Shown: piece after piece, positions 18,070-60,343 of the stretch | Numbering within the stretch: the stretch's first letter is position 1 | How the letters are laid out: each line of letters starts with the position of its first letter | From: Lepidodermella squamata | Lineage: Eukaryota > Animalia > Gastrotricha | Assembly (NCBI GenBank): GCA_047495785.1 | Contig: JBLDXI010000054.1 | Coordinates: 124,001 to 188,000, forward strand | Length of the DNA stretch: 64,000 nucleotides | Direction: 5' to 3' | Made by a program: the position numbers and the translations under genes | The notes under the pieces: model-generated | What the model was told of the DNA's origin: nothing | Databases searched by the model: none | Seen by the model: only the letters and a program-made list of their open reading frames with translations

Positions 18070-21000
18070 TTAGATCCCAGCGGATAGAATAAAGTTGAAA
18101 TTGATGGCCAATATTGCGAATGTAGCCGACAAAAAAGCCAAAATATCGTAAGCCCGAATCAAAGGCAAAGCTTGAAGAGGTTTCATAAGTTTCACTGGTA
18201 ACGAATATTTGTCCTCATGACGAGTCATGACGGCGGATGCGACAATTTGATACATCGCTACCGCTGCTACTGTTGCTGTAAGACTAAGAACGTAGTTTGC
18301 AAACAGAATCTGCTGATCAGTCTCAGGCACGCTTCGCAAGACATCGGATTGAGCGACAACGAGCGACAACATGATTGTGCAACAAATTGCGGGACGATCA
18401 GGGACATCTGGTGCCATCAACATTGTACCGAGCGCGAGGCACAGCAAAATGTAGCAAGGAATCAGGAAGTTGACAATGTAGTAGCCCGGGTTGCGTTCGA
18501 ATTTCAGCTTGAGTTTAACGTAAGAAGAAATTTGAGAAAACAACGGAATGGTGCCGCGTTCTATAGTGTAGCCCTTAAAATTCCAAACGCCAAAGTCGAG
18601 CTTACCAGCTATTTTGACATACATGCCGCCTATCGAAAGAGTATTAATATGTTCCTCGCTTTGTAACACGAGTTCGCAGGTTTGATGGTCGAACGGAAAT
18701 GTCGTGAGGTCAATGTCGCAGCTAGTCGCGAAAGTTCCCACGCGTGTCCAATGGAAAAATAGCGTTCTATTCGGCCGAGTTGGGTAGTAAGCGATATCAA
18801 TCTTCTCCCCGCATGCTGGATTAGTGATGTCGAAATCTGGCGTTTTGTTAGGGAAAATCATCGAGGGTCGCCATATATCAGTTCGCCGGGTTGAGACAAG
18901 TCGCTCCTTATCCTCGGCCTCTGGCGCAGTGTAGCTCGCGTCACAAGAAGATACCATCCACTGTAGGAGTAGAGAACCCCAAAAGTAGGCTCTTTGTTGA
19001 TTTTGCTCGATAGATTCGACGTTTTCCAAGGTTAGCTGAATGTAAATCTGAGTTGCTGCGCCAGGTGCACGCTGCTCTACGTTAAGATGCGGGCAGGGAA
19101 GTAGGTCATCAATTTTAACTGTCTGGGGGAAGTTTCCGAGGAGCAGCTGTGGAACCGGGAAGGTAGTTATTGGATCGTAATAGGACTCGTTTTGCCCGGG
19201 CGTTGATGATGGTGATGTTGGTAATAGTGGCGATTGTGTTTCTGAGGGTGTTGGGAATGGCGATGGCGATGATTGTGATTGTGTTCGTGATAATGAAGGT
19301 AACGGTGAGGTTGATGTCGGGGCTGGCGTTGAAGTTACTGTTAATGTTGGCGTTGGTGTTGGTGTTGGTGTTGGTGTTTGTGTTTGTGTTTGTGTTTGTG
19401 TTTGTGTTTGTGTTTGTGTTTGTGTTTGTGTTTGTGTTTGTGTTTGTGTTGAAGTCGAAGTCGAAGTTGATGTTGATGTTGATGTTGATGATGTCGGTGA
19501 CGGTGATTGTGATGGTGATGTTGTTGTATCGATCACTGTCTCGTTAAAATTTGACAGGACCCAGACAATCCTAGAATAAAGCGGGATTTAGAACAAGTCA
19601 TTGTTATTGTAATGATGCGTCCAGTATGCGGCTATCAGGAGGGGGAGGGGGATGGGGGGATTATCCCTCCCAGCTCGGCTGGTCCAGAAAACAAAATGAG
19701 GATTTATCTTCTTTAATTTTGAGAGGTTCTGTAGCGTGATTCCCCCGTACTTCGCACTCTGTGGGAGAATTATAATGTCGTCGCCGTTGAAAGATCCCTG
19801 AAATCTTCAACGCTGAAGACGACAGTGAATCTGCTGCGCTATATGGCCTCATTTGTGTTTTGCTTGTTTGCTTTACGAGGGGTCGGAGCATGAAGGAAGT
19901 CATATAATGTAAACCTACGCTCGTCGGATGGTGACGGTGCCTTTAAGAGCAGCGACCTCAAGCATTACATTCCCTTGAGGATACGGTAAATTGTCGAAGC
20001 ACATTGCGGATGGGGTCGATCCGTAACCAGGCAATGCCGTAATAGCCACCTGGAATACAATTGAGAGGCAATGAACGCAATATGCAAATGGAAAACACAC
20101 CGAAGCTGTGTAATTGCGCTTTTGCAAAATGAGCCGATACTTTGCGTTGCCGTTCGAATTGAACAGCCCCGAGAGACCACATGATGGGGGTGTCACGTTG
20201 AAGTTGTTGAACGGCACTGGGGTCAAAGTGGCGACCCTAACACTGTTGAATGCAGCGTATAATTCCCCGCTACCGTTCGCGAGTCGCTGCGAAATCGTCA
20301 GGCCTGAATATAAGTTCATGGCGTTGTTTATCGTCCCGTTAGTTGATCCTTATTTCGAATGAATTCAGCGACATGAAAAGTGTGGATTCATACCGGAATA
20401 TCTTACCTATTTGTGAAAACTGAGATTGCCTCGTGTATCCCATGACAAACCAGTATTCCGAGCCGTTTGTAGGATAACTTATATCCATGTCAAATTCGAT
20501 CCGCCAGGACCACGCCTCATGAGTTGGGCCGAAGTCCTATCATTGGCTTTAATTATATTAGCCGAGAGGCCATTTGACCGTTAACAAGTAGGATTGGGCT
20601 AACAGTGCCCGAAGTAGGATCCTCGAACTCGGGGGTATTTTCGGGCCCCAATTTTATGACCAAAGGGTCTCCCCTGTGGTATTTTGGGGGTTTTTCCACT
20701 TTGGCCTGCCGAAGTCGGGGGTACCATACCTCTGTACTTCGCGCCCTGCTGGTTTATTTTCTGTATCTTATCAGTATTTTTGTATTATTAGGGTTGCTAG
20801 ATTTTCTTAGTCAGTTTATCCAGAGGATGTCAAATTTTCAAAATTCAGCAGATCCCAGGAAGACTTCCATCCACCTCAGACGACGGGAGACCCCAAAGTG
20901 TCGCCTAACAGGCTTATCGATTTCGTTTGACGTAATTATCCACTCATCCGTTTTTGACGTCCTTCGATTTCTCGTTTATTTATCCTGGAAGTGGCATCAA

Positions 21001-22837
21001 AATCTCATGATGCATGATGCCCAAAATCTCGCCAAACTCCACTTTTCCCTTGTTAATAGCCATTTTACTTCAAAATTTGAGCTCGTTTTGAATGTTCAAA
21101 TTAGAAGTCCTAATTTTACCAAACAATCTACATAGGATCACACTGTCAAATCTATATATTTATAAACCTGGCGACTGTCTTCCGACAAAATCCCTTAGGC
21201 CCCAGAATTTCGCACTCTCCCTCCCTCAACTCCAAATCCCACGTATGTTGTTAACACCCCTTATGATGTCGTTAGCGACGTTGAATAACTCGGATTTGGT
21301 CTTGTTTACGTCAGTTTCAAGGTACTGGTTGACAAGTAAAAAGCGCTGTTTTTTACGTGAATGAAGAGGCAAACACGATTGGCGTTTTACTTGTCACCCT
21401 TCTCCTTGAAACAGACGTAAACAAGCCTAAATCCGAGTTATTCAACGTCGCTAACGATGTGTGCTTCATTCTTTAGTAAACTCACAGCTATAACTGTAGC
21501 TCGATTTGACGATGGACTGAGCGAACAGCCACTCGAGTTCACGCAAGCTGAGGCCGCCCATCGAGGAATTCCAACCGACGTGCTTTGATTGAACCCATCA
21601 AAGCTATTCACTAGATGCAATGTAGGTGTACCGGATAAATCTGGCGGAAAGGGCAACGTGGAGGTATCGGGCTCTGGAGCGTAGGCGGCGCGGGTATTCC
21701 AGAAATACCTAAGGAAAATCAACATTAAGAATTAAGAATAGATCCAAATATTAACGAGTTAAATTGTTACAGTTTCTTGATAAGAATATCGGCGTTGGTT
21801 CCCATTCCGATGAAAAATGGGCCTAAGGTAGCTTGGTTCATCATAAAGCCGGGTAAGCTGTAGACGCCAGCGTTGTCGGCCATCGGGATGCAAGTGGATG
21901 CATTTCCCGCAAGTGGAACGATAGACAGCTGAGCGAACCATTATTTTCGCACACATGTTTACACATGAGAAAGCAGCTTACACTATGGACATTAGTCGAT
22001 TTTAGAGCTTGAAGTACGATTCGGTAGGTCATGTTGCCCGAACTCGTGAGAATCGCATTGCTACCACAGCTGGGCTGAGACTCGTTAAAGTCTGTCGCAT
22101 TCATCATTGGCGGGCGAAATGTTTCATTAGCAGCAGCCGTTCTACGAGAATCCGAAAAACTCGCATATATCTTGCCACCAGGTTCGAGCTTGTGCCAATT
22201 TATGTTACCAGCCGCGCTGCTGTTGAAGGAATCGAGAAACAGTGCGTTAGGGCTTGATTTTACTGGGATAAAAGCAAATGTCGATGTAACATGCAAATTC
22301 GAGAAGTTTACCTGGTATATAATCAGTAAGACGTCCGATTCCGAACCCGAACCAAGCATCCGATTGAACTGTGTTGTAGCTCACGGACAGCTCGATTTCA
22401 ATCCTGAATGGCGACACAACTCCATGGGCATCTGTTATCAACTAATTTTAAGTATTAAATATGTTCCTGTTTTTCGGTTTTATTTTAACTCACACTTGTG
22501 CTTGCAGTGCCGAAGGTTTTGTTTGGGGAAGTTTGAGAAGAAATTAGCCGGATTCCATTACTCGTGAATTCAGCTGAGTACCCAAGAGTTATACTTGTAT
22601 TGCCGTTGATATTGAGGTTTTCGCGGTCGAACGACAAGCCAGGAATGTAGCGTGGTCTCCCTGCTAAAGTATCTTCAAATGGCACTGATGTTGTGTCTGG
22701 CAGCGGGTCATATCCCGATCGAACCACTCCTATGTTGAAAAATCGATAAAATATGCCATTCAAATTTATGAGTTAGTCAAACCCGATAATGCGAACAAAA
22801 TTAAACTCGTTAAAGTAAATTTCGGAATTTCGAACAT
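18070..22837 (-). CDS. Long-form Cys-loop ligand-gated ion channel L1: signal peptide, two beta-rich domains, mucin stalk, pLGIC (10 exons)
   Basis: ATG at 22837 (MFEIPKFTLTSLILFALS|GVVRSGYDPLPD), eight internal exons homologous to L2-L4. Last exon ~19571-18070 has WRP, Cys-loop CDIDLTTFPFDHQTC and four TM helices. Confidence 0.85.
19345..19520 (-). repeat. Coding hexanucleotide microsatellite (ACACAA/ACACCA/ACATCA)n encoding TQ/TP/TS repeats of the L1 stalk
   Basis: About 12 perfect TGTGTT units on the + strand, flanked by GGTGTT, GAAGTC and GATGTT variants, all in frame. Confidence 0.95.
19622..19761 (+). mobile_element. hAT-like MITE family 2, in the last intron of L1
   Basis: CAGTATGCG...CGCACTCTG ends. 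Body matches 61609-61863 (reverse) and ~38755-38840. Confidence 0.6.
20603..20748. mobile_element. Short hAT-like MITE in an L1 intron
   Basis: TIR CAGTGCCCGAAGTA / TACTTCGCGCCCTG. The end sequence GAAGTAGGATCCTCGAACTCGGGG recurs in reverse at ~45808-45832. Confidence 0.55.
21270..21456. mobile_element. Palindromic MITE, TIR CGTTAGCGACG, 4-bp TSD ATGT
   Basis: More than 50 bp of near-perfect inverted arms. ATGT at 21266-21269 and 21457-21460. Confidence 0.85.
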
Positions 22838-23438
22838 CGGTCGCCTTCTTTTCGAGTTCAAAATTGTGTCGATTTGGTAAAATCGACCAGGCTTCCAACC
22901 AGGCAGACACAATAAAATATATGTCCTATTATAACCGTTGAAAAATGAGTAATCGGCCTACATTTTTAAGACATGGCGCAGACGATCAGGTGTAGGCATT
23001 TTTGAGTTAAAACTTCGCTATTTTCGTACTTATTAATAAAAAATTTTGCTCGCTTCGCTTGAATTCCACATTTTTCTTTCTTTTTCTATCCTCTAGAGCC
23101 AACATTCTCAAGCAGAACTTGGTTCATCAACGCCACTTCGGTGGCGATGTTTGAGCAGCGACTTCCACATCAGCAACTTTCACAATAGAAGTTCTGTTCT
23201 AATTAGGAACTCAATTAAAAAGCAGACGTCAATTCATCGGAAGTCTTGAAAGTTATGACATCACCTCAGTGTTGACTTACTAGTTAAGCAGACTTTTCAT
23301 ATCATACGTTAAAGTGAGAATGATCATGTAATTTCTATAATTTTGAACTCCACCTCCTGATACATCTCCTGGCTGATTTGCAGCCAGTCTAAATGAGCGA
23401 TAAGCGATACATGCCTTTGACAAAAGGCGGTGGGAATT

Positions 23439-23475
23439 CCGGGGAAACCAAATCTAGTTGATTTGGTTTCCCCGG
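23439..23475. repeat. Perfect 16-bp stem, 5-nt loop hairpin
   Basis: CCGGGGAAACCAAATC-TAGTT-GATTTGGTTTCCCCGG. Confidence 0.9.
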
Positions 23476-32619: not shown

Positions 32620-35600
32620 TCAAATCAAGGCCGCGACAATGAAATGGAGGTTGATTCCCAGAACAGCAGTAACCGCTAAGAGAAAAGCAATCGTATCAAA
32701 GATTCGAATCAGGGGCGCGGCTTTTACTCTTTTGAACAAACTAATTGGCATTGCGCACCATCGATGATCGCGAGCCATGGCCGCCGTTGCTAAAATCTCG
32801 TAAACAGCCAGCACAGCCATAGTACCAGTGAGACTGAGAACGTAGTTAGCCAGCAAAATGTGCTGGTCACTTTCGGGAACACTGTGCAAAACATCAGACT
32901 GCGCCACAATGAGCGATAACATGACTGTGCAGCAGATAGCGGGTCGATCAGGGACTTCTGGTTCCATCAACAGAGTTCCGAAGCCGAGAAACAGTAGAAT
33001 ATAGCAGGGTACCACGAAGTTAACGATAAAGTAGCCAGGCTCACGACCAAACTTTAAAGTAACCCGTGCATAGGACACAGTCGAGGAAACGATTGAACTC
33101 GACTCAACAGTCCCATTGTCCTTTGTCAACCCTTGATAGACCCAAACCCCGTAATCCAGAGGCCCCTTAACCCTAACGAACAAGCCTCCGATCGAGACAA
33201 AATTAACGTGCTCATCTACAAGAAGTGTCAAATCGCAAGTTTGGTAGTCGAAAGGAAACGTTGTTAGATCCAGCACGCAGCTAGTCGCGAAAGTTCCCAC
33301 TCGAGTCCAGTGGAAGAACAAAGTTCGATTCGGCCGAGTTGGGTAGTACGCGATTTCTATCTTCTCCCCGCACACAGGGTTGGTTACATCAAATTCTGGA
33401 GTTTTGTTCGGGAACATCATCGAAGGCCGCCATATATCAGTTCGCCGGGTAGAAACAAGCCGCTCCTTGTCTTCAGCGCCTGGGGCTGTATAGTTCGCGT
33501 CGCAAGAGTTGACCCTCCACTGTAGGACAAGGGTGCCCCAGATGAGGACCCGCTGTTGCTCCTGGTCGATTGATTCGATGTGTTCTAACGTAAGTTGGAC
33601 GAAGATATTGGTACCGAAACCTGGGGTTCGCTTGTCGACGCTTATGTATGGGCAAGGCATCAAGTCGTCCACGCTAACAGTCGGTAAGATATTCCCAACG
33701 AAAAGCTGAGGTATGGGGAAACCAGTTGTGGGGTCATAATAGCGGGGTGCAGCAGTGGTCGACGAAAAGTCTTGCATTGTAGTAATGGCCGTGGCATTAT
33801 TTTGCGTTGCAGCAGTGCTGGTCGCAACATCTTGTTTTACAGTAGTGGTCGTGGCGATATTTTGCGTCGCGGCTGAAATGGATGGCGTCAGGCTGAGAGT
33901 CGTAGACGTAGTAGAGGAAACTGGGTCAGTTAAAGCAGTTGAGGACTGTGTCGAAGTTGGCGAGGCATTGCCACTGGTCAGAATCCAAGTGTATCTGAAA
34001 TGCGAACAAAAAGGGGTACATGAGAATCAAGTTTTTAGATGTTAACGGTTCTCCGGTAACTTGAAATGAGCAAATAAGATTTCTTACGTGCTCTTGACGT
34101 TCAGGTCTCCTTTGAAAGACATTAGTTCGGCCATAGTATTTCCTTGTGGGTAGGTCAAATTCGAGAAGCAAACAGCTGAACGCCCGGCGCTGTCGGCACT
34201 TGACAACTGAAAGGAGAGCAGGTGCCAATCGACAAACAAAAATATACGAGTTATGCCTTTTTAATTCGTCCCCTATTCAGATTTCCAATTTCCCGTTATA
34301 AACAGAAATATATCAAGATTTGTCCATTTCTTCCCGATTTTATTTGCTTGCTTGTGCTATTGAAGTTCTTCTAGTCGAAGAGGATAATTTCAATAGATGT
34401 TTTTGAAAACTTTACAGGATGTACAATTGTATAAGTGAAAAATTTAAATGATTTTTTCATAGATTTCGTCGGTAAATTACGGGAAAACCAATTCCGAGAA
34501 AAAGTTATAAAAAAAACAAACCGTGGCAGAGTAATTTATCTTCTGAAAGATCAGTCGATACTTGGCATTTCCGCCAGAAACAATGAGTCCTGAGAGGCCA
34601 CAAGCTGGTAGTGAAACTGAGCTGTAATTGAAGGGCGCTGATGTCATATTCAAGGTTTTATTAGCGTTATAGGAAGCGTAGATTTCCCCGCTCCCATTAG
34701 CCAAGCGCTGCGCGAGAATGAGCCCGTTGTAATTTTGCATCGCGTTGTAAGTCTTATTGCCATCAGTCGAACCTGAAAAAAATGTATAGCCGATTTATTC
34801 GATGGAAATTCTGAATTTTACCGAATGTTTTCCACAAAAACTGCGTAAAGAAGTTTAACACGAGCCATGTCTCCGATCCATTTGTTGGATACGTTGCATC
34901 TATGTCAAACTCCATTCTCCACGGCCATGTTTCGTAAGTAGCCCCAAACTCCTGTTTTGGGGAAGCTGAAACCTACGTTTCTTTAATCATTAAATCTCAC
35001 AGCGAAGATTGTTCCAACTGCCTGTGGTCTCCATATGCTTTTAAGCACACAACCTGTAAGGTACGTGCATTCTCCGGCTCTCCATCTCAAAGGCGAGGGT
35101 GAAACAGTGGCATTGTATCCGTCAAAGCTATTTGAAAAATGCAAATTGGCCAACCCAGAGAGGTCGGCTGGTAAAGCGAAGCTTTGAGCATTAGGCTGTG
35201 GAACTACAGTACCGATCAAATTCCAAAAATACCTGACAAAATAAAGTTGTTTTGTTCAATTACAATTTGTTCAAATTTCAAATAAAATTAGAAAATTGAA
35301 AAATTAATTGTTTTTGCCACATACTTACATTTTCTTCACAACGATATCAGCATCGGACCCGGAACCAATGAAGAATGGGCCGAAGGAACCTTGCATCAAA
35401 TAGTCCTCCAAGCTGATTAATGACCCAGTTGTATCGACACCAGTCACACAGCTTGCAGCGGAGAGGGGCGTAGCTCCGTTCAACGGAATGACGAAAACCT
35501 AATTTTTACAGTATTATTTCAGTAAATTCAGTAATATTATCGTTAGAGCTTTTATTTATTAAAATACCACAGGGGATCATTTGGTCCTAAACTTTGGTCC

Positions 35601-36635
35601 TAACATTCGCCCACATGTGAACATCAGTTTGTTTTATACCCCCTGCCACTAAGCTAGCCTTAGCCCTGCAGCGTAGTCGTTATTCTCAAAACTCACATCA
35701 ACCAAACGATAATTTTTCTGCGTTTGTAAGACAAGTCGATAATTCATGCTGCCTGAATTCGTAAGCACCATGTTGTTTCCACAACTAGCTTGTGATGCGT
35801 ACAAAGTCGATACGTTGATCGGAATGGCGAATGTCGAGTTGATTGCGCTAGTCTTGTCTTGATAGCTCGCGTACATCCGCCCACCTACTTCGATTTTATG
35901 CCAGATAGTTAGTGCTGCTCCGTAGCTGCTGAAGCCGTCAAAACCGATCGAGCTGTTGGTCAATTTAGCTGAATTCGATCACACACCACGAAAGGCAAAA
36001 CAAATCAATTCAATTCACTCAAAGAATATACCGCTACTAAGTAAAAGGTTCAGCGGTCCGGTGAATTTATTTAAAGTTGATTAAAAAAAGCTGCTTATCA
36101 ACTGACCTGGGACATGATCTGAGAGTTTTCCGAGTCCGAAACCGAACCAAGCATTCGAACTGCCTGTTGAATAGGTGACAGCCAGTTCAATCTCGATTCG
36201 CCATGGACTGAGAATTCCCATTGTGTCATTTACCACCTTTATTGTTCAAAGCAGCGTTAATTTGCGACAGAATATATGAATCAAAACTAACCGTTCCACT
36301 GGCCGTTCCAAACGTGCTGTTGGAGTTAGGTGCCATTGACACCAATTGGTAGCCGTTTGACACAGTTTTAGATGAGTAGAATTGCTTGACCACGGAATCA
36401 CCGTTGATGGCCGAATTTTCGCGGTCGAACGATAAACCAGCAACATAGCGCGGCTGGCCTGATAATATGTCTGGCAAGGCTACAGAGCCTGTGTCAGGAT
36501 CAGGATTGGCTGTCGATAGCGCCGATTCTTGATAGTAAAATTAAAAAAATGAGCTTCGAAGACTGGAAATGCCTACGAACCTATCAGAGCTGCGAGAGTA
36601 CCTAAATGGAGAAGCCAACACTTGAAATCAGTCAT
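32620..36635 (-). CDS. Long-form Cys-loop channel L2 (10 exons)
   Basis: ATG at 36635 (MTDFKCWLLHLGTLAALI), the same exon series as L1, S/T stalk, Cys-loop CVLDLTTFPFDYQTC, M1-M4. Confidence 0.85.
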
Positions 36636-49555: not shown

Positions 49556-49962
49556 GAGCCGTTCAAATGGAGCGCTTGTGAGAATAGTGAGTATGAAATT
49601 GCGTGTGATTGTGAGGCAGATGAGTTCTACAGATTGAATATATTTGATGGATGTTCGATGTTCGGCCTAAACGCAACAAAATGCAGAACATAAAATTTTG
49701 TATTTGACGCCAAAATATTCTACAATATCCAGAAAGGATTACGAGGTGGATGAATATCCGAAAGCTAGTTAGGATGCTATTAAGAGCAGCGGAATGTCAG
49801 ATTAGATATATGAAAGTTGAATATCCGTTATAGCTTGTTCAACCGGTTTTTACCCCGGCTTACATCTGGAGTGAGAGAAAATGATAGAGCGTGATGTGGA
49901 TTAATTAACGAAGGGAGGATTGTGCACGGTGACTGTTCAATGAATGCAGGCGTTCTGAAGTT

Positions 49963-52900
49963 TCAGATTTCTGTGTAAACGGAGAAGTAAAGATTAACTC
50001 CCAAGACGATGAATAGCGCAGCCAGAAAGGCCATGAAGTCATAGACACGGATTAGTGACAGCGCTTTGCAGCAGCGTAGCAGGGTAATTTCGGTTAAAAG
50101 TTTGGCTTCTATACGATTTGTCATGAAGGCTGAAACAACAATCTCATACAACGCCAAGGCAGCCACAGTTGCTGTTAGGCTTAGAACGTAGTTGGCATAC
50201 AGGATCTGGGTATCAGTCTCAGGAACGCTGCGCAAGACGTCAGATTGCGCGACGACCATTGACAGCATGATTGTGCAACAAATTGCGGGACGATCTGGAG
50301 CGGCTGGCTCCATTAGCAGGCTGCCGAATCCGAGAAACAACAAAATGTAGCAAGGGATCATGAAGTTCACAATGTAGTAGTTGGTATCACGTTTGAACTT
50401 TAAAACGACCTTGGCGTATGAAACAAATGATGTTGCTCTTGACTTCGAAGCCACGGTACCCTTTTCAATCTTGTAGTTCTCAAATTCCCAAACGCCGTAA
50501 TCAAGAGAACCAGCTATATTAACATATAACCCGCCAATCGAAAGAAACTCAGTATTCTCCTCGAGTTCCATTGTCATATCGCAGGTTTGATGGTCAAAAG
50601 GAAACGTTGTTAGGTCTAGCTTGCAACTGCTCGCTAATGTTCCAACACGTATCCAATGGAAAAACAAGGTTCGATTCGGTCGGGTTGGGTAGTAAGCGAT
50701 TTCAATCTTCTCTCCGCATACTGGATTTGTTATATCGAAATCGGGCGTTTTGTTTGGGAAAATCATCGAAGGTCGCCATATGTCAGTCCGCCTGGTTGAA
50801 ACAAGCCGTTCTTTATCTTCAGCTCCTGGTGCTGTGTATCTTGCGTCGCAAGAAGAAACCGCCCATTGCAGAAGGACGGAACCCCAAAAGTAGACCCTTT
50901 GCTGGCCCTGCTCGACAGACTCGATGTTATCGAGGTCTAGACTGATGAATACCGATGTAGCGCGTCCCGGAGCCCGCTGTTCGACACCAAGATAAGGGCA
51001 CGGGGTAAGATCATCCGTTGCAATTGTCGGTACCATATTTCCAGCCAAGAGCTCTGGAACAGGAAAGCCTGTAACTGGATCGTAGTATGAGCTCTCATTT
51101 CCTAGATCTGTCATTGAATTCGAACTTCCCTTTTCCGAAGTTGCGAGGCTTGTGGATGTTGTTATCGCATTTGTTTGTTTGACCGACGTGCTCAGTGAGG
51201 TGTATTGCTGCGTAGTAGTTGTCATGAGGCTGGTTGATGAGGATGACGATGTCTTCGATGATGACGAAACAGTTGTCGTTGTGCCGTTTCTTGTCGGCGA
51301 CAAAATCCAAGTCATGCTTTCCAAGAGAATAATGATTTCGAGAGGTTTCAGGTGCAAGGAAACTTACAATCGCCTGACATTGACGGTACCCCTGAATACT
51401 ACCATTTCGGCCATGGTATATCCCGTTATGTATCGTAAGTTGGTGAAGCATATAGCCGAAGGAGTCGCTCCATATCCAGGCAACGCTGTAATACCAACCT
51501 GGGAGAAAATCATTTACCGCCGATAATAAAAAAGAAAGATACCAACCGTCACAGTGTAGTTGACCTTTTGTACTATCAGCCTGTACTTCGCATTGCCGCT
51601 TGAATCAAACAAGTTCGATAGACCGCACGCTGGCTGTGACACACTGGTGTAATTGAACGGCACTGGGGTGTAATTCATGACTTTGACGCTGTCAAAAGCC
51701 GCGTAAAGCTCCCCACCGCCGTTCGCAAGTCGGTGAGAAATGGTCAATCCATTGTAATTCAGCATAGCATTATTGCTGCTCTGGCCGTCAGTTGAGCCTG
51801 TCAATTCAATATAAATGATAATAGCTTGAGGGTTTCAACTCTTCAACTTGCCAAAAGACTTCCACGCATAAAGGGTGGGGAAGCTAAGGATAAACCAGGA
51901 CGACGATCCATTCGTCGGATAATAGGCGTCTAAATCCACTTCGATGCGCCAGGGCCAATTCTCATGAGTATTACCAAAGTCCTGTGAGATACATCACAGC
52001 TTGAAAATGCCTAATCAATCAGACCATGCTCACCCCTGATATGAATGATAACGGTGAGGGTGACTGAAGGGTGCAGCCTTTCAGGTAGGAGCATGACGTA
52101 GGTCCCCATCGATGCGTCCAGGCCGTGATGCTGCTGTTATAGCCGTCGAAGCTGTTGATCATGTGAATGGAGGGAGGCCCAGCTAAATCAGTCGGATAAG
52201 GCACAGTAATGGTGTCTGGTTCAGGGAGCACGGATCCTTGCGTATTCCAGAAATAACTGCGTTTAGAAATGATGCAAATACAAAAACATATTTCTCTTCT
52301 GTCCTCTTTGAAAGACAAATCTTTCAATTATGAATTTCAATTAGAAAGAAAACATTTGCATCATGCCATCTATATCAGATGTTGGAGCAATCCCTCTGAC
52401 ATTGGAATCGATTGAACAGTTCAATATTTAGGAAGGCAATAACATAAACACAACCCTAGCGAAAAAGTTTTCGCGTGTACATGCATCGACTATGAATTGA
52501 CTTGCATGTCGGTGGCGCTATACATCGCATGCCAACGAGTTGTGGTTTTTTAACTAGGGAACGTATTTCCTGTGGCTGATTTTCACTCATCATATCATTA
52601 TCTTTTTTTATCTCTTCAATATCTTTCTCGAAAGTGGCCTACTCTAGGGATCGATCTCTGCTAGATGTTGGAGTAATCTGTCCGAAATGCGACTACAATG
52701 AAGGACATTTTTCAAATGGATATTTTTGCAAGATGACTTAGCATCATAGTCGCGCGATATATATTGAATAGGCAGCAATCAACTTACAATTTCCGAATGA
52801 TGATATCAGAATCCGAACCCATTCCGATGAAGAAAGGTCCACAGTATGCCTGGGCCATCATCAGGTTTTGCAAAGCGTAAACTGTCCCTGACATATCTAC

Positions 52901-53881
52901 GTCTTCAATGCAATTCGTCGACTGTAAGGAATCACTGCCGTTCAGAGGAATAATAGAAACCTGACATTTCGAGTATAATTGTCGAGGTAAAATGCCCGTC
53001 TTTAAACATCAAATAACTAACGTTATACGTGCGATAATTACGCTGCGCTTGGAACACGATTCGATACGTCAAGCTTCCGACATTTGTCAGAACATTATTG
53101 TTACCGCAGCTTGGCTGCGATTCGCCAAAGTCTGTACTCCCGTTTATCGGGGGTCGAAAAGTGACGTTGCCGCTTGGTAGTTTGAACTCAGAAAAGCTTG
53201 CATAGATCTTACCGCCAATTTCGAGCTTGTGCCAGATCGTCGCACTTGCTCCGTAGCTGCTAAAAGTATCGTAAATCTCAGCTGAGCTATTTGATTTTGC
53301 TAAGGTTAAGTTCGAAGTTCGAGGTATAAATCATGAGAGGCTCGAAATCTGACCTGGTATCATGTCAAGTTTTTTACCGATTCCAAACCCGAACCACGCG
53401 TCGGAGTTGCTGGTTTTGTAAGTAACAGAAACCTCGACTTCAATTCGAAACGGAGCCACCAAGCCATGCTTATCAGTTATCAGCTGCGAAATAACTTCAA
53501 TTGGTTGCTTTAGTCTTCAAATGGAGACAACTCACTGTTCCTCCAACCATTCCGAAAGTTTTGTTCAAATTTGGCTGCGAAGAAATTAGCTGAATGCCAT
53601 TTTGAACGTATTCAGCTGAGTAGGAGAGAGCCAGGCTGGAGTTTCCGTTGAGATTCCCATCAGTTAGGTCGAAAGACAGGTCAGCTACATATCGTGGAGT
53701 CCCTGCCAATGATTCTTGAAGAGGAACAGAAGTCGTGTCTGGTATAGGGTCTCTTCCTGATTCAACAGCACCTAAATTCACGTTTTATTCATAATCAGTT
53801 ACAATACTGACGCAATTTTAAACCTGTGGCGGCAGACAGAATTATAACGGCGGAGACCAAATATGAGTTAGAATAAAGCAT
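49963..53881 (-). CDS. Long-form Cys-loop channel L3 (10 exons, one GC-AG intron)
   Basis: ATG at 53881 (MLYSNSYLVSAVIILSAAT|GAVESGRDPIPD). All exons splice in frame to the channel exon. Cys-loop CKLDLTTFPFDHQTC. Confidence 0.88.
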
Positions 53882-54518
53882 TATCAGGTAAATTTAACGA
53901 AAAGCGGAACAAGATTTTTCGCTGTTTATCATCTCAGCTGCGACGCCGTGATAGAAAGCATTATCGTTTACAGATTCACCTTTTAGTAACCAAGGCTCGA
54001 AAGCGAATGACAGACATCTATGGCTTGTATTGCCTTCATCTCAAATGTTTATAGAGCAGCTGCATAAAGTTTTTACTCGGCGTTTGTCGACTCGGACAAT
54101 TTTCTCTTCTGAATTGATAAGTATTTGAAGTAATGCAGAAAACAGGTTTATTAATTTTTAATTATCCCTTATCCCATACACGTAATATATTTTGCATTGG
54201 TCTAAGAGTAAAGGCCGTTGTTTTCCTTGCTCCTCAGATATAAAGCTTGAATGAAAGTATAACCCACATACCGCTTCAGACATTCAAAGATGCCGCCTCG
54301 CAGTGTTTCAGTGAAGAGCAATATCCCATGTGCTGTCGATGATCATTATTCCAAAGTCCAGATAATAAAGCAACGAATTAGTTGGCAGAAATACACCTAG
54401 GGTTGAGGGCCGGTTCAAATTCTGAGAAGCTGATACTATTTGACGTTGTGCACGCGTACAAATTTCTCTGGTCACTGGGGCCGAATTCAAAGCTCAAATA
54501 AGCTTGGAAAATATTTTT

Positions 54519-55106
54519 TTAACATCAAATTACTTTTTCTATCATCAAACTCTTTTTCAACAGCAAAATTCGGGATTTATTATTTGATAGGCAAGAATAT
54601 ACTTTCATGATAATGTTGCGGAGGTGTTGTGCTACATGCGAAAGTCCGGCTACGAGCGATGTCAGTGCCGGGCAAAGTTGCTTCTCGACGGCGAGACATG
54701 GGTGCTGAAGCATTCGGCATTCGGGGCGAAGCAGCGTCACAAGGCGGCGTAAAACGTTCCGGCAGCTTAACCTTGAAGGGCCCTGACTAATTTCACTCAT
54801 TTGAATCATCGTCTTCGACAAAATGGGAATCGTAAAATTATTCGGACAAATATTCGGACAAATATTCAAAAATTCATTTTTTGGCCAAAAATCAAACATT
54901 TGTCTGTAACTTTGCGAAATTGCAGCTAACTCAATTTTTCATAATTTCTTAAACGGGTTCGACAGAACAAACTACATTGTTCGTCCGAATTTTCTGTTAT
55001 TTTTCCGGACTGGTCATCATCAATGAGTGCGGGTCGCAAAAATTAACATATCGAAATTTGCTGTTGAAAAAAGAGTTTGATGATAGAAAAAGTAATTTGA
55101 TGTTAA
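54519..55106. mobile_element. Inverted-repeat element (probable non-autonomous DNA transposon; true ends uncertain)
   Basis: About 50 bp TTAACATCAAATTACTTTTTCTATCATCAAACTCTTTTTCAACAGCAAA is mirrored at ~55057-55106. Confidence 0.6.
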
Positions 55107-56033
55107 GAAATGTGACCCCAAAGCTTCTTACGCGTTTTCCTGCGACAAAAGTGTCGAATAAAACCATAGAATAAAACGATTGCAAAAAATAAGTAAATTC
55201 GTTTTCAATTTCAACAGTAATTTTCTATTAAAAAAAGCTTAGGTTACTTATATGCTTGCGAAATTCTAAATTTAAATATTTATTGTTCATTGAATTCAAG
55301 TTAGAAATTCTGAAACTTCAGACTGCTATTTTTCATTGAAAATTATCTTCATCGCCAATCATAGACCGATTTTGCTCATTGCCGGCCCTCGTTCTTTAAC
55401 CAAACGCTAAAATTGTCTTGGTTATTACGACGGCGAGCCCACTACGCTTCAGCCAGTGCTTCAAACTAATACAGTCTGAACATACCAGATTTTGGAGAGA
55501 TTCATAGTATCTTGCATTTCCTTGCTTCTAGTGAGCCAGGTCACATCGGGAAGCTGGTCTCAGGTCTCAGGGCTGTCATGCTGAACACCCATCACAGGGT
55601 AAAAGTTGTTACAATTGAGCACTGGCTCTTCATGTAAACATCCTCAGATAAATAGCAAAGTTTAACATTTCCAAACACAGTCCAAGCAGTTTGAAGCATG
55701 ATCACAGGAGCGATGTTTGTTAGTTAAATTTATGAAAATGACCGTCTGATGTCCTGAAATCCTGCTTTATTAATTCAAGATTCGTGAAAATAATGGGTCA
55801 ATAAGCTCACAGTAAAAAGTAAATAAAATACTTATTAATTGTTGATAACAATCCTCTACAGCTGAATAGCCGCTCGAGTTGAAGGAAATATACAGCGGGC
55901 AAAGTAACATGGCGATATATGTGACCTAAGCGCTTAACTGCGTGTAACACAATACGTATTCTAGCTTGTGTAATTTGAATTTAGAATCTAGTTAGCAAAC
56001 ACAAGCGAGCTGAGTTGTTGATTTTTACGCAGC

Positions 56034-59000
56034 TCAAAAACCTGCGACAGCAACCAAGTACAAATTGGTGCTTAGGATGAAAAACCCAGCCGCAAGAACT
56101 ACCAGGATGTCGCAGACACGATTGAATTCCACTGGTTTGAAGCGGCGAAAGAGTTGGATCGGAATTGTGTGTTTTACATCATCCCGAACCATAACTATTT
56201 CATAAATGGCAACGGCAGCCATAGTCGCGTTGAGACTCAAGGCATAGTTTGCTAACAATATTTGCTGATCAGTCTCAGGAACGCTTCGCAAGACATCAGA
56301 TTGCGCGACGATCAGTGACAGCATGATTGTGCAGCATATGGCTGGGCGGTCCGGGACGCTCGGATCCATCAACAGAGTACCAAGTCCGAGTACTATCAGG
56401 ATGTAGCAGGGGATCATGAAATTCACAATGTAATAACCATATTCACGTTTAAACGTCAGCGTAATCCGTGCATAGGAAACACGCGAAGACGCCCTTATTC
56501 GCGATGGCATTGTACCCTGTTCACTTTTGTACTTTGATAACTTCCAAACGCCGAAGTCGAGAGACCCAACCACTTTAACGTACAGCCCGCCGATAGATAG
56601 AAACTCTGTGTTTTCCTCTAAAGCCATCGTCATATCGCAAGTTTGGTTGTCAAAAGGAAACGTTGTCAAGTCCAACTTGCAGCTGGTTGCGAATGTTCCA
56701 ACGCGGGTCCAGTGGAAAAACAAGGTTCGATTCGGTCGGGTTGGGTAGTAGGCGATTTCAATCTTCTCCCCGCATACCGGATTGATTGTATCGAAATCGG
56801 GGGTTTTGTTGGGGAAAATCATCGAAGGTCGCCATATGTCAGTTCGCCGGGTTGAAACGAGCCGCTCCTTGTCCTCTGCACCTGGGGCTGTGTAGTTAGC
56901 ACTACAGGTGGATATCATCCACTGCAGCATGAGTGAGCCCCAAAAGTAAGCCCTCTGTTGGTCTTGGTCGATCGATTCGACATTTTCTAGGTAAAGAATG
57001 GCATATACCATCGATGCCCGTCCAGGTGTTCGTTGCTCGACCCCAAGATACGGGCACGGAATAATATCGTCGATGACTACTGTCGGCATGAAGTTCCCAG
57101 CTATGAGCTGCGGAACAGGGAATGTCGTTATTGGATCGTAGTAGCGTTCTCCGCTGGTTTCAGAAGACGGCTGAGCTGAGACTGCAATATCTGATATCGC
57201 TTCAATTATCGAAGAGGTCGTACCAGAACTCGCAGTTTGGGAACTCAACGTCGATGGCCCTGGCTGGTCGGAGGAGGACGATGAAAATGGTTGTTTTGAG
57301 GAAGTTGGCAAACTCGTGGATAACGACGGTTGAGAAAGAGTAGTGGTAGTAGCCATTGATGTTGGCAACCATGCCCAAGTTATTCTTAAATAAAGGTCAA
57401 TAATACTAGAAATACAATGTGCCTCATATCTCATATGTATTGCGCAACTGCTTTTGAATTTTTTCCAGAGAATTTCCATATTTTTTATTAAATGTTGCTA
57501 TCTTCAGCTGTTTGCATCCTTGCTCCACGATTCATAAGAGTAAAATGCAAGTTCATCGAAGAAATTCGTGTACTCTCCTTGTGGGAATACGCGACTTGTA
57601 CAAAAGGTTTTGCACAAAATCGATTTTTTTCATTCGTTCAAATCGTCGAATTCTAAGCATCGCCGGTACACTTGTTTTGAATGGTTGTAAACAAGAAGGA
57701 GCGCGTGCAAATTTATTTCTACGGCACATGATGTTAAATTTGCTTGTCTCTGACGGTTTAAAGGCTCGTTTTCTCATCAATGCGGGAGACAATTTTATTC
57801 CAATTCACTGTCACTTAAATAAAAGTATCAGCGATGCTTAGAATTCATCGACCATTCGAACGAATGAAAAAAATCGATTTTGTGCAAGTCGAGTATACCC
57901 CTCGTTTGCGATATTTATGAGACACGCTGTTTTCTAATAGTTGAAGCTTAATCAAATTTCAGCCTTACGCTCTCCTAATGATAACAGTTCCATTGAATCC
58001 CACCAGATCTATCATGCTGGAACCATTGAGATACGGAAGGTTGGTGAAACACGTGGCAGGTGTTGTTGAGCCAAATCCGGGTAGTGCCGTAATCGTAAGC
58101 TGAAAAAAATAAATAAATTTATAACTTGCTTAATTTGAGCTTGAAACAACCGATCCAGAGTAATTGATTTTCTGGAATATCAGCTTGTACTTGGCGTTGC
58201 CACTCGAATCGAATAGACCAGACAAGCCACAGGCAGGCGTTGTCACTTGAGTGTAATTGAACGGTACCGGGGTCAGAGATCTGACATCTGTGGAGTAGTA
58301 AGCTGAGTAGAACTCCCCTCCTCCCTTGGCGAGTCGCTGTGAAAGTGTGAGACCATAGAACCATCTCATCGCATTAGTCCCCTGACCAACAGTCGAGCCT
58401 AAAATCCTCAATAATCAAGTCATCTAAAGGAGTCCTGTTACTTACCGAAAGACTTCACGCTATTGAATATTGGGAAGTTAAGAACCAACCAAGATTGAGA
58501 TCCATCTGTCGGGTAATTTGCATCTATATCTATTTCAATTCGCCAGGACCAAGTGTCAAGTAGTTGCCCGAATTCCTACAGCAAGAAAGAAAGATTTCAG
58601 AATGATATCATAGAGAAAACAATAACCACTCAATCCAAATATGTGGAAAAAATGCCGCAAAGACACTAACGGAAATTGTGACTTGCGTAGCGGGTTGAAG
58701 AACGCAGCCTGTTAGATTGACACAAGTACCATTCGCCCATCGATTTGGGAAAAGCGTACTGCTACTGTCGTACGCATCAAAGCTGCCTGTCTCATGCAAC
58801 GTCGGAGCTTCAGTTAAACGAGACGGCAGGGGCAAGGTAGCCGTATCCGGCCCCGAAGGAAGTATAGTGGCGCGAGTTCTCCAAAAATATCTCAAGACAC
58901 ATTGGTATAGCATTACTACGATGATGTAATATCAACTCACAATTTTTTTACGATGATATCAGCGTCCGATCCGATGCCCATGAAATACGGCCCAAAGCGA

Positions 59001-60343
59001 GATTGTTGTGCCGCAATGTGCATCATCACATGGAATTGAGTATAAAAGCCTCCTGCCATGTCCATATCTGCAATGCAATTGCTCGCAGCCAGCGCTTGGT
59101 TCCCACTCAGCGGTACAATTGAAATCTGGTCAGTGCAAAATAAGCATGTTTACTTCAAATTCCCAAGGTACTTCGATTTACATTAACAAATCGGAGACCT
59201 CCTTCCCGTTGTAAATCAAACAAATCTCCCATTTCAAGCCCCATTCCCCGCCTAGAAACCGCAAAACAGTGCAGGGGAATCAACGAACAGGAAAAAAACA
59301 ACAGTGAACCCTTCGGAAATTAATTTTGGGTTTGAAAATAACCCTTAGGTCAAGTTTCCTATCCCTCGCACTGTCACAAAATTCTCGATCTGATTTAAAA
59401 GACAGATAAAGGGTCTCCTCTCGAAAGTCTTTCTCAGACTACTGCACTGGAGAATGCATTAAGCCTAAATATCACTAAAATACTAACGTTGTAGGTTCGA
59501 TAAACGCGCTGCGATTGGATGATGATCCTATAGGTCATGTTTCCCGAATTCGTAAGCATCGCAGCATTACCACAGCCTGGCTGAGACACGGCGTTATCCG
59601 TAACACCATTCATCGGTGGTGGATGCAGGGTTTGAGACACCGAGGAAGGACTTTGAGCATAGCTCACGTAGATTCTCCCTCCTGTTTCCAGCTTGTGCCA
59701 AATTGTAAAACCTGCTCCATAGCTGTAGAAGGAATCAAAGTTGACTGAAATATTGTTCGACTTTGCTATATATTATGGGATAAATAATATGTTGGGGATT
59801 TTAATATTGATCCTGAATTACCAGGCGTAAAGTCGGATAGACTTCCGAGTCCGACTCCGAACCAAGCGTTAGGATTACTGGGTTTAAAACTGACGCTCAC
59901 ATCGACTTCCATCCGAAACGGTGCCAGCAATCCAAGATTGGTTGTTATCATCTGAATGGAATAAATTCGAAAAATAAACAATTCGCCCCGAAATCCTCAA
60001 TCCTCACCCTTCCATTGGCTAAGCCGAATGTTTTATTTGCATTCGGCTGCGAGGAAATCAGTCTAATGCCGTTTTGAAGCAATTCAGATGAGTAGCTAAC
60101 TGTCAAGTTTGAATTTCCGTTCACATTTGCATCTGTTGCGTCGAATGATAGCTCTGAAATGTAACGCGGGGTGCCTGACAAGAATTCCTGAAGGGGGATG
60201 GAAGCAATATCTGGTACCGGGTCGTATCCACAGTCGACCACGCCTAATTGTTGATTTAATAAAAGAATTGTACCCAGTATGAAGTTGATTTGCAAACCTG
60301 AAGCCGCGGCCAGTATGATGAACTGTGAGATGATAGTAGGCAT
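56034..60343 (-). CDS. Long-form Cys-loop channel L4 (10 exons)
   Basis: ATG at 60343 (MPTIISQFIILAAAS|GVVDCGYDPVPD), conserved exon series, S/T stalk, Cys-loop CKLDLTTFPFDNQTC, M1-M4. Confidence 0.85.
57580..57900. mobile_element. Foldback/MITE in the last intron of L4
   Basis: TTGCACAAAATCGATTTTTTTCATTCGTTC...GAATTCTAAGCATCGC is mirrored at ~57830-57887. Confidence 0.65.

What the first reader, a model, noticed from the sequence alone, without database searches (positions are those of the whole stretch)
18070..60343. Family of Cys-loop channels carrying two tandem extra N-terminal domains on a mucin-like stalk
Seen: four genes (18070-22837, 32620-36635, 49963-53881, 56034-60343) splice via canonical sites into ~950-1000 aa proteins: signal peptide, domain A, domain B, S/T stalk, Cys-loop extracellular domain, M1-M4. 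Established: animal pLGIC subunits normally begin directly with the ligand-binding domain. Extra N-terminal domains are known mainly in prokaryotic pLGICs, such as DeCLIC with two jelly-roll N-terminal domains. Inference: a pentamer would display ten recognition domains on flexible glycosylated tethers. That suggests an ionotropic contact/chemo-, glycan- or tether-gated receptor system that I do not recognise as described.
Basis: partly seen in the sequence, partly recalled or inferred. Interest (0 to 1): 0.95.

Follow-up and report, generated by a model that had tools for sequence, protein, structure and literature searches.

The report
Cys-loop channels with tandem N-terminal modules
Four neighbouring genes of a short-intron invertebrate each encode a nicotinic-receptor-type ion-channel subunit carrying two extra, duplicated outer domains on a sugar-coated stalk, a layout that channel structural papers say eukaryotes lack, although a lobster genome paper has annotated something comparable.

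Summary
I rebuilt four minus-strand genes. Each has 10 exons with conserved sizes and phases and gives an open frame of 987-1030 aa. The order is signal peptide, module A (about 270 aa), module B (about 245 aa, a duplicate of A), a 76-129 aa stalk that is 43-55% Ser/Thr, then a complete Cys-loop channel.

The channel part is a true pLGIC by Pfam, by a profile match to nAChR alpha7 (E 1e-23), and by an AlphaFold model (pLDDT 89) that matches solved receptors at TM 0.7-0.8. Synonymous sites between paralogs are saturated, yet both modules are constrained (pN 0.26-0.37).

Three things support the fusion:
- The channel exon has no signal peptide of its own.
- The exon 9/10 junction is phase 2 in all four genes, and in two of them the intron is only 51 or 93 nt.
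- An environmental metazoan relative carries module(s), poly-Thr stalk and channel in one 812-aa ORF.

No RNA data could be found. The A/B module has no detectable relative and its fold could not be tested, so "lectin" and "recognition" remain guesses.

The design is not undescribed. The 2021 lobster genome paper reported Cys-loop receptors with lectin, pentraxin or LDLa domains. This scan has also noted similar families on other pieces of this genome. Verdict: real, a new variant of a known kind.

The parts
22783..22837 (-). g1 exon 1: start codon and signal peptide
   Evidence: ATG at 22837, hydrophobic h-region, phase-1 donor
21771..22729 (-). g1 module A, exons 2-5 (22729-22494, 22441-22312, 22262-21982, 21928-21771)
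   Evidence: Conserved in all paralogs, E 1e-12 to 1e-34. Model. pN 0.28-0.35 against saturated pS.
19919..21708 (-). g1 module B, exons 6-9 (21708-21486, 20536-20407, 20348-20101, 20049-19919); intron 6 is 949 nt
   Evidence: A/B homology.
19183..19570 (-). g1 stalk, at the 5' end of exon 10: 129 aa, 52% Ser+Thr, 16% Pro, with a TQ dipeptide run
18070..19182 (-). g1 channel: extracellular domain with Cys-loop at 18676-18720, M1-M4, stop codon
   Evidence: Pfam Neur_chan_LBD E 9e-11
36581..36635 (-). g2 exon 1: signal peptide
35329..36527 (-). g2 module A, exons 2-5 (36527-36292, 36236-36107, 35968-35697, 35498-35329)
34088..35232 (-). g2 module B, exons 6-9 (35232-35001, 34951-34822, 34772-34522, 34206-34088)
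32620..33994 (-). g2 exon 10: stalk (33994-33742, 46% Ser+Thr) and channel (33741-32620, Cys-loop 33235-33279). Intron 9 is only 93 nt.
53824..53881 (-). g3 exon 1: signal peptide
52788..53771 (-). g3 module A, exons 2-5 (53771-53536, 53483-53354, 53299-53022, 52960-52788)
51368..52256 (-). g3 module B, exons 6-9 (52256-52034, 51981-51852 with a GC-AG donor, 51797-51547, 51498-51368)
49963..51316 (-). g3 exon 10: stalk (51316-51088, 55% Ser+Thr) and channel (51087-49963, Cys-loop 50581-50625). Intron 9 is only 51 nt.
   Evidence: AlphaFold model pLDDT 89. Foldseek matches to solved pLGICs.
60298..60343 (-). g4 exon 1: signal peptide. Intron 1 (54 nt) is in frame and free of stops, so the signal peptide and module A are also one continuous ORF.
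58941..60243 (-). g4 module A, exons 2-5 (60243-60008, 59951-59822, 59765-59488, 59125-58941)
57969..58890 (-). g4 module B, exons 6-9 (58890-58671, 58575-58446, 58398-58151, 58099-57969)
56034..57405 (-). g4 exon 10 (acceptor at 57405 or 57384): stalk to 57144, channel 57143-56034 (Cys-loop 56637-56681)
16488..17070 (-). g0: frameshifted fragment of a channel exon (residues about 791-981 of the family), a pseudogene remnant downstream of g1
   Evidence: tblastn gives three HSPs in different frames
63106..64000 (-). g5: channel exon of a fifth paralog, 85% identical to g3, running off the window end

Best explanation
These are four intact, old tandem paralogs. A fifth is cut by the window end and a sixth is a decayed fragment.

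Each encodes one polypeptide. A cleavable signal peptide is followed by two homologous modules of about 250 aa that are rich in N-glycosylation sites and bonded by disulfides. Next comes a 76-129 aa Ser/Thr-rich linker that is probably O-glycosylated and extended. Last is a complete Cys-loop pLGIC subunit of the cation-channel (nicotinic/5-HT3-like) type with a very short M3-M4 loop.

Five subunits would form a channel whose canonical extracellular domain still does the gating. The ten outer modules, held tens of nanometres out on flexible stalks, most likely bind an extracellular macromolecule such as a glycan, matrix, cuticle or partner protein. That binding would position, cluster or feed ligand to the channel, rather than drive the gate through rigid contacts as in DeCLIC.

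Shown: the gene structure, the domain order, the pLGIC identity and fold, the A/B duplication, and purifying selection on every part except the stalk sequence. Inferred: splicing, pentamer formation, cation selectivity, glycosylation, and any binding role of A and B.
For: - Gene models have conserved exon sizes and phases and complete ORFs.
- All N-terminal exons show coding conservation. pN is 0.26-0.37 in A and B and 0.18-0.22 in the channel, against saturated pS of about 0.75.
- No paralog's channel exon has a start codon followed by a signal peptide. g1 has no in-frame ATG before the extracellular domain.
- The exon 9 donor and exon 10 acceptor are phase 2 in all four genes, and a conserved x-T/V-W-x-L peptide follows the acceptor.
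- Intron 9 is only 51 nt in g3 and 93 nt in g2, which leaves no room for a separate promoter.
- Relative P0151 (L001) has a signal-peptide exon, a 48-nt GTAAGT..CAG intron, then one 812-aa ORF holding two modules, a poly-Thr stalk and the channel.
- P0038 holds two Laminin_G_3 domains and a pLGIC in one 1099-aa ORF.
- Pfam Neur_chan_LBD matches all four genes. The family profile best matches nAChR alpha7 at E 1e-23.
- M2 reads P(-2') D(-1') R(0') ... T6' ... L9' when aligned to nAChR alpha3.
- The AlphaFold model has pLDDT 89 and matches GABA-A, GlyR, ELIC and nAChR chains at TM 0.7-0.8.
- The stalk is 43-55% Ser+Thr, and the N-terminal region carries 11-15 N-x-S/T sequons.
Against: - There is no transcript evidence. 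The only public runs holding this DNA behave as DNA.
- Intron-1 donors are weak, and one intron is GC-AG.
- A stop codon follows the exon-9 donor, so a secreted isoform made only of the modules is possible.
- A and B have no detectable relative or family, so a binding role is only an analogy.
- The loop-B Trp of nicotinic receptors is absent and loop C varies between paralogs, so no agonist can be proposed.
- Arg at position 20' is unusual for cation channels.
Confidence: 0.6

Rival explanations
1. The two modules are an allosteric gating or modulatory domain, as in DeCLIC. Binding of an ion, sugar or protein to A or B is transmitted to the extracellular domain and opens or tunes the pore, giving a macromolecule- or contact-gated ionotropic receptor.
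For: DeCLIC's two jelly-roll lobes influence gating. The tandem two-module layout is conserved in four old paralogs and in relative P0151. A and B are under purifying selection.
Against: DeCLIC's lobes pack against the extracellular domain. Here a low-complexity Ser/Thr linker of 76-129 aa intervenes, and its sequence evolves almost freely (pN 0.53-0.59). That makes rigid coupling unlikely. No sequence relation to any known sensor domain was found.
Confidence: 0.15
2. Exons 1-9 and exon 10 are two separate genes: a secreted two-module protein and a plain channel. Alternatively, exon 10 is joined only in a minority isoform.
For: A stop codon lies immediately after each exon-9 donor, so intron retention would give a secreted protein of about 535 aa. 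Introns 9 of g1 (348 nt) and g4 (563 nt) are long. No RNA data exist.
Against: The channel exons lack a signal peptide, which a pLGIC needs. g1 has no ATG before the extracellular domain. The gaps are 51 nt and 93 nt in g3 and g2. Phase and the peptide after the acceptor are conserved. Relatives carry the fusion in single ORFs.
Confidence: 0.08
3. The genes are decaying or non-functional duplicates, or artefacts of assembly or of my gene models.
For: One frameshifted fragment (g0) lies beside g1. g3 has a GC-AG intron. g4 lacks four residues at the end of M3.
Against: All four ORFs are complete, with pN well below saturated pS in every structured part. Contigs of an independent run cover the locus, including the exon 8-10 region (50828-51595), at 98-99% identity.
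Confidence: 0.04

Closest known systems
Lobster 'chimeric' Cys-loop receptors with lectin, pentaxin or LDLa domains (Polinski et al. 2021, PMC8221624)
   Same: They are animal Cys-loop receptor subunits (PF02931/PF02932) with extra extracellular domains, form an expanded lineage-specific family, and have never been tested functionally.
   Different: The lobster domains are recognisable Pfam/SMART families (CLECT, PF00354, PF00057). Here the two modules match no family, are a tandem duplicate, and sit on a mucin-like stalk. The channel has a very short M3-M4 loop. The host is a different, short-intron invertebrate.
DeCLIC, a prokaryotic pLGIC with an N-terminal domain (PMC9897478; bioRxiv 10.1101/2025.02.27.640520)
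   Same: It has two tandem beta-rich N-terminal lobes in front of a pLGIC extracellular domain, a short M3-M4 link and an acidic intracellular pore mouth.
   Different: DeCLIC is bacterial and belongs to the prokaryotic family members described as Pro-loop, and its lobes pack directly on the extracellular domain. Here there is a true Cys-loop, the best sequence matches are animal nAChRs, a disordered stalk of 76-129 aa intervenes, and no sequence link between the N-terminal domains was found.
Nicotinic acetylcholine receptor alpha7 and other cationic Cys-loop receptors
   Same: These are the best profile matches in the PDB (E 1e-23). Shared features are the C-x13-C loop with the FPFD motif, the loop-A W-x-P motif, the loop-D Trp, the M2 9' Leu, and an acidic -1' residue.
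   Different: There is no vicinal Cys pair in loop C and no loop-B Trp. The M3-M4 loop is about 20-25 aa. An extra conserved Cys pair lies before and after beta1-beta2. About 610-660 extra N-terminal residues precede the extracellular domain.
Unannotated environmental relatives P0151, P0004, P0013, P0033 and P0038 (ENA metagenome assemblies; P0151, P0013 and P0038 traced to BioSample SAMN13674978)
   Same: These are the closest channel sequences found (up to 35% identity) and share the extra Cys pair. P0151 has two modules, a poly-Thr stalk and the channel, and P0004 also has a Thr-rich stalk. Introns are about 48 nt. Contig neighbours are metazoan genes such as CUB+trypsin and Med22.
   Different: Their N-terminal regions show no sequence similarity to modules A and B. 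Some carry Laminin_G_3 or EGF.
N-terminal domains of ionotropic glutamate receptors (AMPA/NMDA)
   Same: They are an accessory extracellular layer above the ligand-binding layer that mediates assembly, partner binding and modulation. PMC9897478 draws this analogy.
   Different: The fold and the channel superfamily are unrelated, and there is no mucin-like tether.

Membership tests
Pentameric ligand-gated ion channel (Cys-loop) superfamily | Extracellular ligand-binding domain of the Neur_chan_LBD family | tested here: met
   PF02931 matches all four genes at E 6e-10 to 9e-11, above the gathering score. The family profile matches 316 PDB pLGIC sequences.
Pentameric ligand-gated ion channel (Cys-loop) superfamily | Cys-loop: two Cys 13 residues apart flanking the F-P-F-D motif | tested here: met
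   A C-x13-C loop containing TTFPFD is present in g1-g4 and invariant in the alignment.
Pentameric ligand-gated ion channel (Cys-loop) superfamily | Four transmembrane helices, with a pore-lining M2 carrying 9' Leu | tested here: met
   Hydropathy shows four segments. The model has helices at 242-264, 272-294, 303-330 and 352-378. The M2 alignment to nAChR alpha3 places Leu at 9'.
Pentameric ligand-gated ion channel (Cys-loop) superfamily | Whole-subunit fold like solved receptors | tested here: met
   The AlphaFold model has pLDDT 89 and pTM 0.82. Foldseek matches GABA-A, GlyR, ELIC and nAChR chains at E about 1e-18 and TM 0.7-0.8 over about 360 columns.
Pentameric ligand-gated ion channel (Cys-loop) superfamily | Pentameric assembly and ligand-gated conductance | not testable with these tools
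   This needs expression and electrophysiology or cryo-EM.
Nicotinic-type (cationic) branch | Acidic residue at M2 -1' and no P-A-R anion motif | tested here: met
   The sequence is P-D-R, which aligns to G-E-K of nAChR alpha3. Selectivity itself is inferred.
Nicotinic-type (cationic) branch | Agonist-site hallmarks: loop-B Trp and the vicinal Cys pair of loop C | tested here: not met
   The loop-B G-S-W of alpha3 aligns to a gap. Loop C has no Cys-Cys and varies between paralogs.
DeCLIC-type N-terminal-domain-bearing prokaryotic pLGIC | Two jelly-roll lobes packed directly against the extracellular domain of a prokaryotic (Pro-loop) channel | tested here: not met
   The channel has a Cys-loop and is nearest to animal nAChRs. 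A Ser/Thr linker of 76-129 aa separates the modules from the extracellular domain. The fold of the modules could not be tested.
Lobster-type lectin/pentaxin/LDLa Cys-loop receptors | CLECT, PF00354 or PF00057 domain in the same protein as PF02931/PF02932 | tested here: not met
   Pfam scans of the N-terminal exons returned no family even at E up to 10. The scans were exon by exon, so a weak whole-domain match cannot be excluded.
L-type lectin / concanavalin A-like (LamG) fold for modules A and B | Jelly-roll beta-sandwich recognisable by profile or structure | tested here: inconclusive
   There was no Pfam, PDB-sequence or Atlas match for our exons. hhalign against relatives' N-terminal regions, including Laminin_G_3 of P0038, was negative. 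The only hint is a language-model match of 0.91 between module 2 of relative P0151 and legume lectins. A single-sequence AlphaFold run on that module failed, with pLDDT 30. The spliced A/B protein has no reference and was not folded.
Mucin-like tether | Low-complexity Ser/Thr(/Pro)-rich segment, variable in length and sequence | tested here: met
   The stalk is 76-129 aa, 43-55% Ser+Thr and up to 16% Pro, with 19-30% identity between paralogs and pN 0.53-0.59. O-glycosylation itself cannot be tested here.

The most novel reading that the evidence does not exclude
A metazoan class of ionotropic receptors in which ten orphan-fold binding modules on glycosylated tethers couple recognition of a macromolecule or surface (glycan, cuticle, microbe or partner cell) to a Cys-loop cation channel. 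The coupling could work by gating the channel, or by capturing and concentrating its agonist. That would make it an ionotropic contact or pattern receptor, evolved independently of the lobster lectin-channel fusions and of bacterial DeCLIC.
Probability: 0.2. Interest if true: 0.85.

Novelty: new variant of a known kind. Interest (0 to 1): 0.6.

Why it matters
Structural papers on pentameric channels state that N-terminal accessory domains do not occur in eukaryotic family members (PMC9897478; bioRxiv 10.1101/2025.02.27.640520). The only counter-example I found is an annotation-level report from the lobster genome.

This locus adds an independent case. It is old, under selection, and occurs in several copies in another invertebrate lineage. 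Its accessory module has no detectable relatives and is joined by a mucin-like tether.

If the proteins are expressed, they give a tractable system for two questions. First, what can accessory extracellular domains do for a Cys-loop channel: anchoring, ligand capture or gating? Second, how do such fusions arise, given that an intron-rich duplicated ectodomain is joined here to an intronless channel exon? The stripped-down channel (short M3-M4 loop, about 370 aa, confidently modelled) may also be a convenient structural target.

Tried and rejected
- **Transcript test.** The look-up of sequencing runs returned only two runs. Read laying on 49600-55500 showed DNA-like contigs that span introns, plus tiny contigs with strand-flip joints. 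There was no spliced joint, so expression and the exon 9/10 junction remain untested.
- **Fold of A and B.** The spliced modules have no reference, so I did not type them into the folding tool. That step was left out.
  - Exon-wise Pfam at E up to 10 gave nothing.
  - A PDB profile search of exons 4 and 8 gave nothing meaningful.
  - Atlas feature searches on two pieces gave nothing.
- **Relatives of A and B.**
  - BLASTP, phmmer and hhalign against the N-terminal regions of 158 retrieved proteins were negative.
  - The search for related loci in JGI metagenomes with exon 8, and then with the channel, found no relatives.
  - The search for homologous proteins with exons 4 and 8 was negative, and so was the same search with the N-terminal region of P0151.
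- **Folding the relative's module.** P0151 residues 150-450 folded as a single sequence gave pLDDT 30, which is unusable.
- **Long annotated NCBI/UniRef hits.** Hits from clam, scallop, acorn worm, flounder and Macrostomum turned out to be tandem channel-channel fusions, not channels with N-terminal domains.
- **Identity of the organism.** An exact look-up of a window protein found nothing. I rely on earlier scan notes for 'probably a rotifer' and did not verify it.
- **Rejected origin.** I rejected bacterial origin or DeCLIC membership because the channel is nearest to animal nAChRs and has a true Cys-loop.
Full report
**What is in the sequence**

The window is eukaryotic. It has many GT-AG introns of about 50 nt and a Ty3/gypsy element at 1730-6303.

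On the minus strand, four large terminal ORFs (18070-19536, 32620-33777, 49963-51357, 56034-57479) each match Pfam Neur_chan_LBD at E 6e-10 to 9e-11.

I translated the upstream DNA in three frames and compared the four regions exon by exon. Eight further conserved coding blocks appear per gene, in the same order, at E 1e-12 to 1e-37. Cross-matches between blocks 1-4 and blocks 5-8 point to an internal duplication.

I chose splice sites by frame, by consensus and by homology of the junction peptide. This gave four complete ORFs of 1030, 989, 987 and 991 aa. Each has 10 exons, with nearly identical exon sizes and identical intron phases.

- 35 of the 36 introns are GT-AG. Intron 7 of g3 is GC-AG.
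- The four intron-1 donors are weak but alike.
- In g4, intron 1 is in frame and free of stops, so the signal peptide and module A are also one continuous ORF.
- Nucleotide similarity between paralogs lies almost entirely in exons.

**Domain order**

1. Residues 1 to about 19 form a signal peptide.
2. Module A is about 270 aa and is encoded by exons 2-5.
3. Module B is about 245 aa and is encoded by exons 6-9.
4. The stalk and the whole channel are encoded by exon 10.

Modules A and B align over their full length with the same four-exon layout. They are 22-27% identical, and hhalign gives probability 98.7% and E 2.6e-16. Together they carry 11-15 N-x-S/T sequons. Module A has two conserved Cys and module B has four. 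This fits a secreted, disulfide-bonded ectodomain.

The stalk is 76-129 aa and 43-55% Ser+Thr. It has up to 16% Pro in g1, which also holds a long Thr-Gln dipeptide run. It shares only 19-30% identity between paralogs.

**Selection**

Synonymous differences between paralogs are saturated (pS about 0.65-0.85), so the duplications are old. Non-synonymous differences are far lower in the structured parts: 0.26-0.37 in A and B and 0.18-0.22 in the channel. In the stalk they are 0.53-0.59. So both modules and the channel have been kept under purifying selection in all four copies. For the stalk, only composition and approximate length are kept.

**Is it one gene?**

I could not get transcript evidence. 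One has contigs that run across introns. The other has tiny contigs with strand-flip joints. No spliced joint appeared on 49600-55500. One of those contigs covers 50828-51595, so the genomic adjacency of exons 8, 9 and 10 is seen in reads as well.

The case for a single gene is therefore comparative:

- No channel exon begins with a start codon followed by a signal peptide, which a pLGIC needs. g1 has no in-frame ATG before the extracellular domain.
- The exon-9 donor follows a conserved T-V-x-[IV]-[RK] motif. The exon-10 acceptor precedes a conserved x-[TV]-W-x-[LW] peptide. All four junctions are phase 2.
- Intron 9 is only 51 nt in g3 and 93 nt in g2.
- The nearest database relative of the channel is P0151, at 35% identity. 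It lies on a 3.3-kb ENA metagenome contig (L001). There, a signal-peptide exon is followed by a 48-nt GTAAGT..CAG intron and then one uninterrupted 812-aa ORF. That ORF contains the rest of module 1, a second module, a poly-Thr stalk and the channel.
- From the same BioSample, P0038 carries two Laminin_G_3 domains and a pLGIC in a single 1099-aa ORF.
- Also from that BioSample, the contig of P0013 carries clearly metazoan neighbours, including CUB+trypsin, Med22 and TFIIS.

I put the probability that exons 1-10 form one mRNA at about 0.9. A stop codon sits right after each exon-9 donor, so a secreted isoform made only of the modules, produced by intron retention, cannot be excluded.

**The channel**

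A profile of the family best matches nAChR alpha7 among PDB sequences (E 1e-23). Other nicotinic subunits and 5-HT3A follow, and prokaryotic channels do not lead the list.

An AlphaFold model of the g3 channel part, built on a 40-sequence alignment, has pLDDT 89 and pTM 0.82. It shows the expected beta-sandwich and four helices. It matches solved GABA-A, glycine, ELIC and nicotinic subunits at TM 0.7-0.8.

Features that are present:
- the C-x13-C Cys-loop with FPFD,
- the loop-A W-x-P motif,
- the loop-D Trp,
- M2 reading P(-2') D(-1') R(0') ... T6' ... L9'.

The acidic -1' residue, together with the lack of a P-A-R motif, suggests cation selectivity. This is inference.

Features that are absent or unusual:
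- The loop-B Trp and the loop-C Cys pair are missing.
- Loop C varies between paralogs, so no agonist can be named.
- The M3-M4 loop is only about 20-25 aa.
- An extra Cys pair near the start of the extracellular domain is nearly invariant across this family and its environmental relatives.

**The N-terminal modules**

Everything I could run on modules A and B came back empty:
- Pfam found no family, even at E up to 10.
- A PDB sequence-profile search found nothing meaningful.
- A search of the 5.8-billion-protein collection with the core exons found no relative.
- JGI metagenome contigs held no locus.
- The protein Atlas gave no usable hit.
- BLAST, phmmer and hhalign found no similarity to the N-terminal regions of the retrieved channel relatives, including the Laminin_G_3 regions.

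Two weak hints exist for a lectin-like jelly-roll. First, a language-model match of 0.91 links module 2 of relative P0151 to legume (L-type) lectins. Second, by eye, the starts of A, B and the P0151 modules share an E/x-P-D ... P-F ... S-F-D-type motif. The AlphaFold run on the P0151 module as a single sequence failed, with pLDDT 30. 'Lectin' therefore remains a hypothesis.

**How it most likely works**

I read these proteins as subunits of cation-conducting pentamers gated through the canonical extracellular domain. The ten accessory modules would be held out on flexible, probably O-glycosylated stalks.

The stalk is long, disordered and free to change in sequence. Rigid transmission of a conformational change from A or B to the gate, as proposed for DeCLIC where the lobes pack on the extracellular domain, therefore seems unlikely. 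Binding of an extracellular macromolecule that anchors, clusters or supplies ligand to the channel fits the anatomy better.

My estimates:
- about 0.45-0.5 for the anchoring or ligand-capture role,
- about 0.15 for direct allosteric gating,
- under 0.1 for separate genes,
- a few percent for non-functional copies.

**Comparison with what is known**

Structural papers state that N-terminal domains are 'not found in eukaryotic relatives' (PMC9897478). The same point appears in bioRxiv 10.1101/2025.02.27.640520. The broad inventory of Jaiteh et al. 2016 (PMC4795631) does not mention them.

So the general idea of an animal Cys-loop channel with extra extracellular domains is already published at the annotation level. 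What differs here is the host lineage, the orphan duplicated module, the mucin-like tether and the minimal channel.

Long annotated hits in NCBI and UniRef (clam, scallop, acorn worm, flounder, Macrostomum) are tandem channel-channel fusions, not proteins of this kind.

Earlier notes of this scan describe similar families, some called LamG-like, on several other pieces of the same genome. The genome therefore seems to hold a large radiation of such genes. I treat those notes as leads only.

**Verdict**

- This is a real and unusual gene family, best classed as a new variant of a known kind.
- Interest is about 0.6. It would be higher if transcripts confirm the fusion and the modules prove to be a new fold or a gating element.

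Noticed in passing
window 39089-40399 (+) and 62357-62892 (+): A plain Cys-loop channel gene (h1, a 436-aa ORF with Neur_chan_LBD) has no conserved upstream module exons. It is only 24% identical to g3. A truncated 80%-identical copy (h2) lies near the window end. Channels with and without the N-terminal modules are therefore interleaved in the cluster.
   Followed up: partly
window 16488-17070 (-): A frameshifted fragment of a family channel exon (loop C to M4) lies just downstream of g1. It looks like a pseudogene remnant.
   Followed up: partly
window 63106-64000 (-): A fifth paralog (g5) has a channel exon 85% identical to g3. Its upstream exons lie beyond the window end.
   Followed up: partly
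window 24509-26893 (+): An intronless 794-aa ORF has an ANF_receptor ligand-binding region (E 2e-16) followed by hydrophobic segments. It looks like a family-C GPCR-like receptor sitting between the channel genes.
   Followed up: partly
window 14637-15757 (-) and 48432-49555 (+): Two very similar pepsin-type aspartyl protease genes (Pfam Asp) lie in opposite orientation, one near g1 and one near g3. This suggests a larger inverted segmental duplication that carried the channel genes.
   Followed up: partly
window 43749-44432 (-) and 27665-28012 (-): Two paralogous ORFs encode an unassigned beta-rich domain. The longer ORF ends in an EGF-like Cys pattern (weak EGF_TEN match). No family was found for the main domain.
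   Followed up: no
window 1730-6303 (+): A Ty3/gypsy-type LTR retrotransposon carries gag, protease, RT, RNase H, integrase and a chromodomain. The gag-pol and integrase frames are split.
   Followed up: partly
window 10886-13880 (-): A cluster of ankyrin-repeat ORFs (Ank_2, E 1e-41). An ankyrin gene also neighbours the environmental relative P0038 on contig L003.
   Followed up: no
window 19300-19450 (-), inside g1 exon 10: A long Thr-Gln / Thr-Pro / Ser-Thr dipeptide run, a coding microsatellite, makes the g1 stalk about 45 aa longer than the others. Stalk length is probably polymorphic.
   Followed up: no
L001, L002, L003 (ENA assemblies ERZ23486764 and ERZ23486787, BioSample SAMN13674978): One environmental sample holds a compact metazoan genome with about 48-nt introns. 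It contains many channels with N-terminal modules, including versions with EGF and with two Laminin_G_3 domains. It is the only place where close relatives of this family were found.
   Followed up: partly
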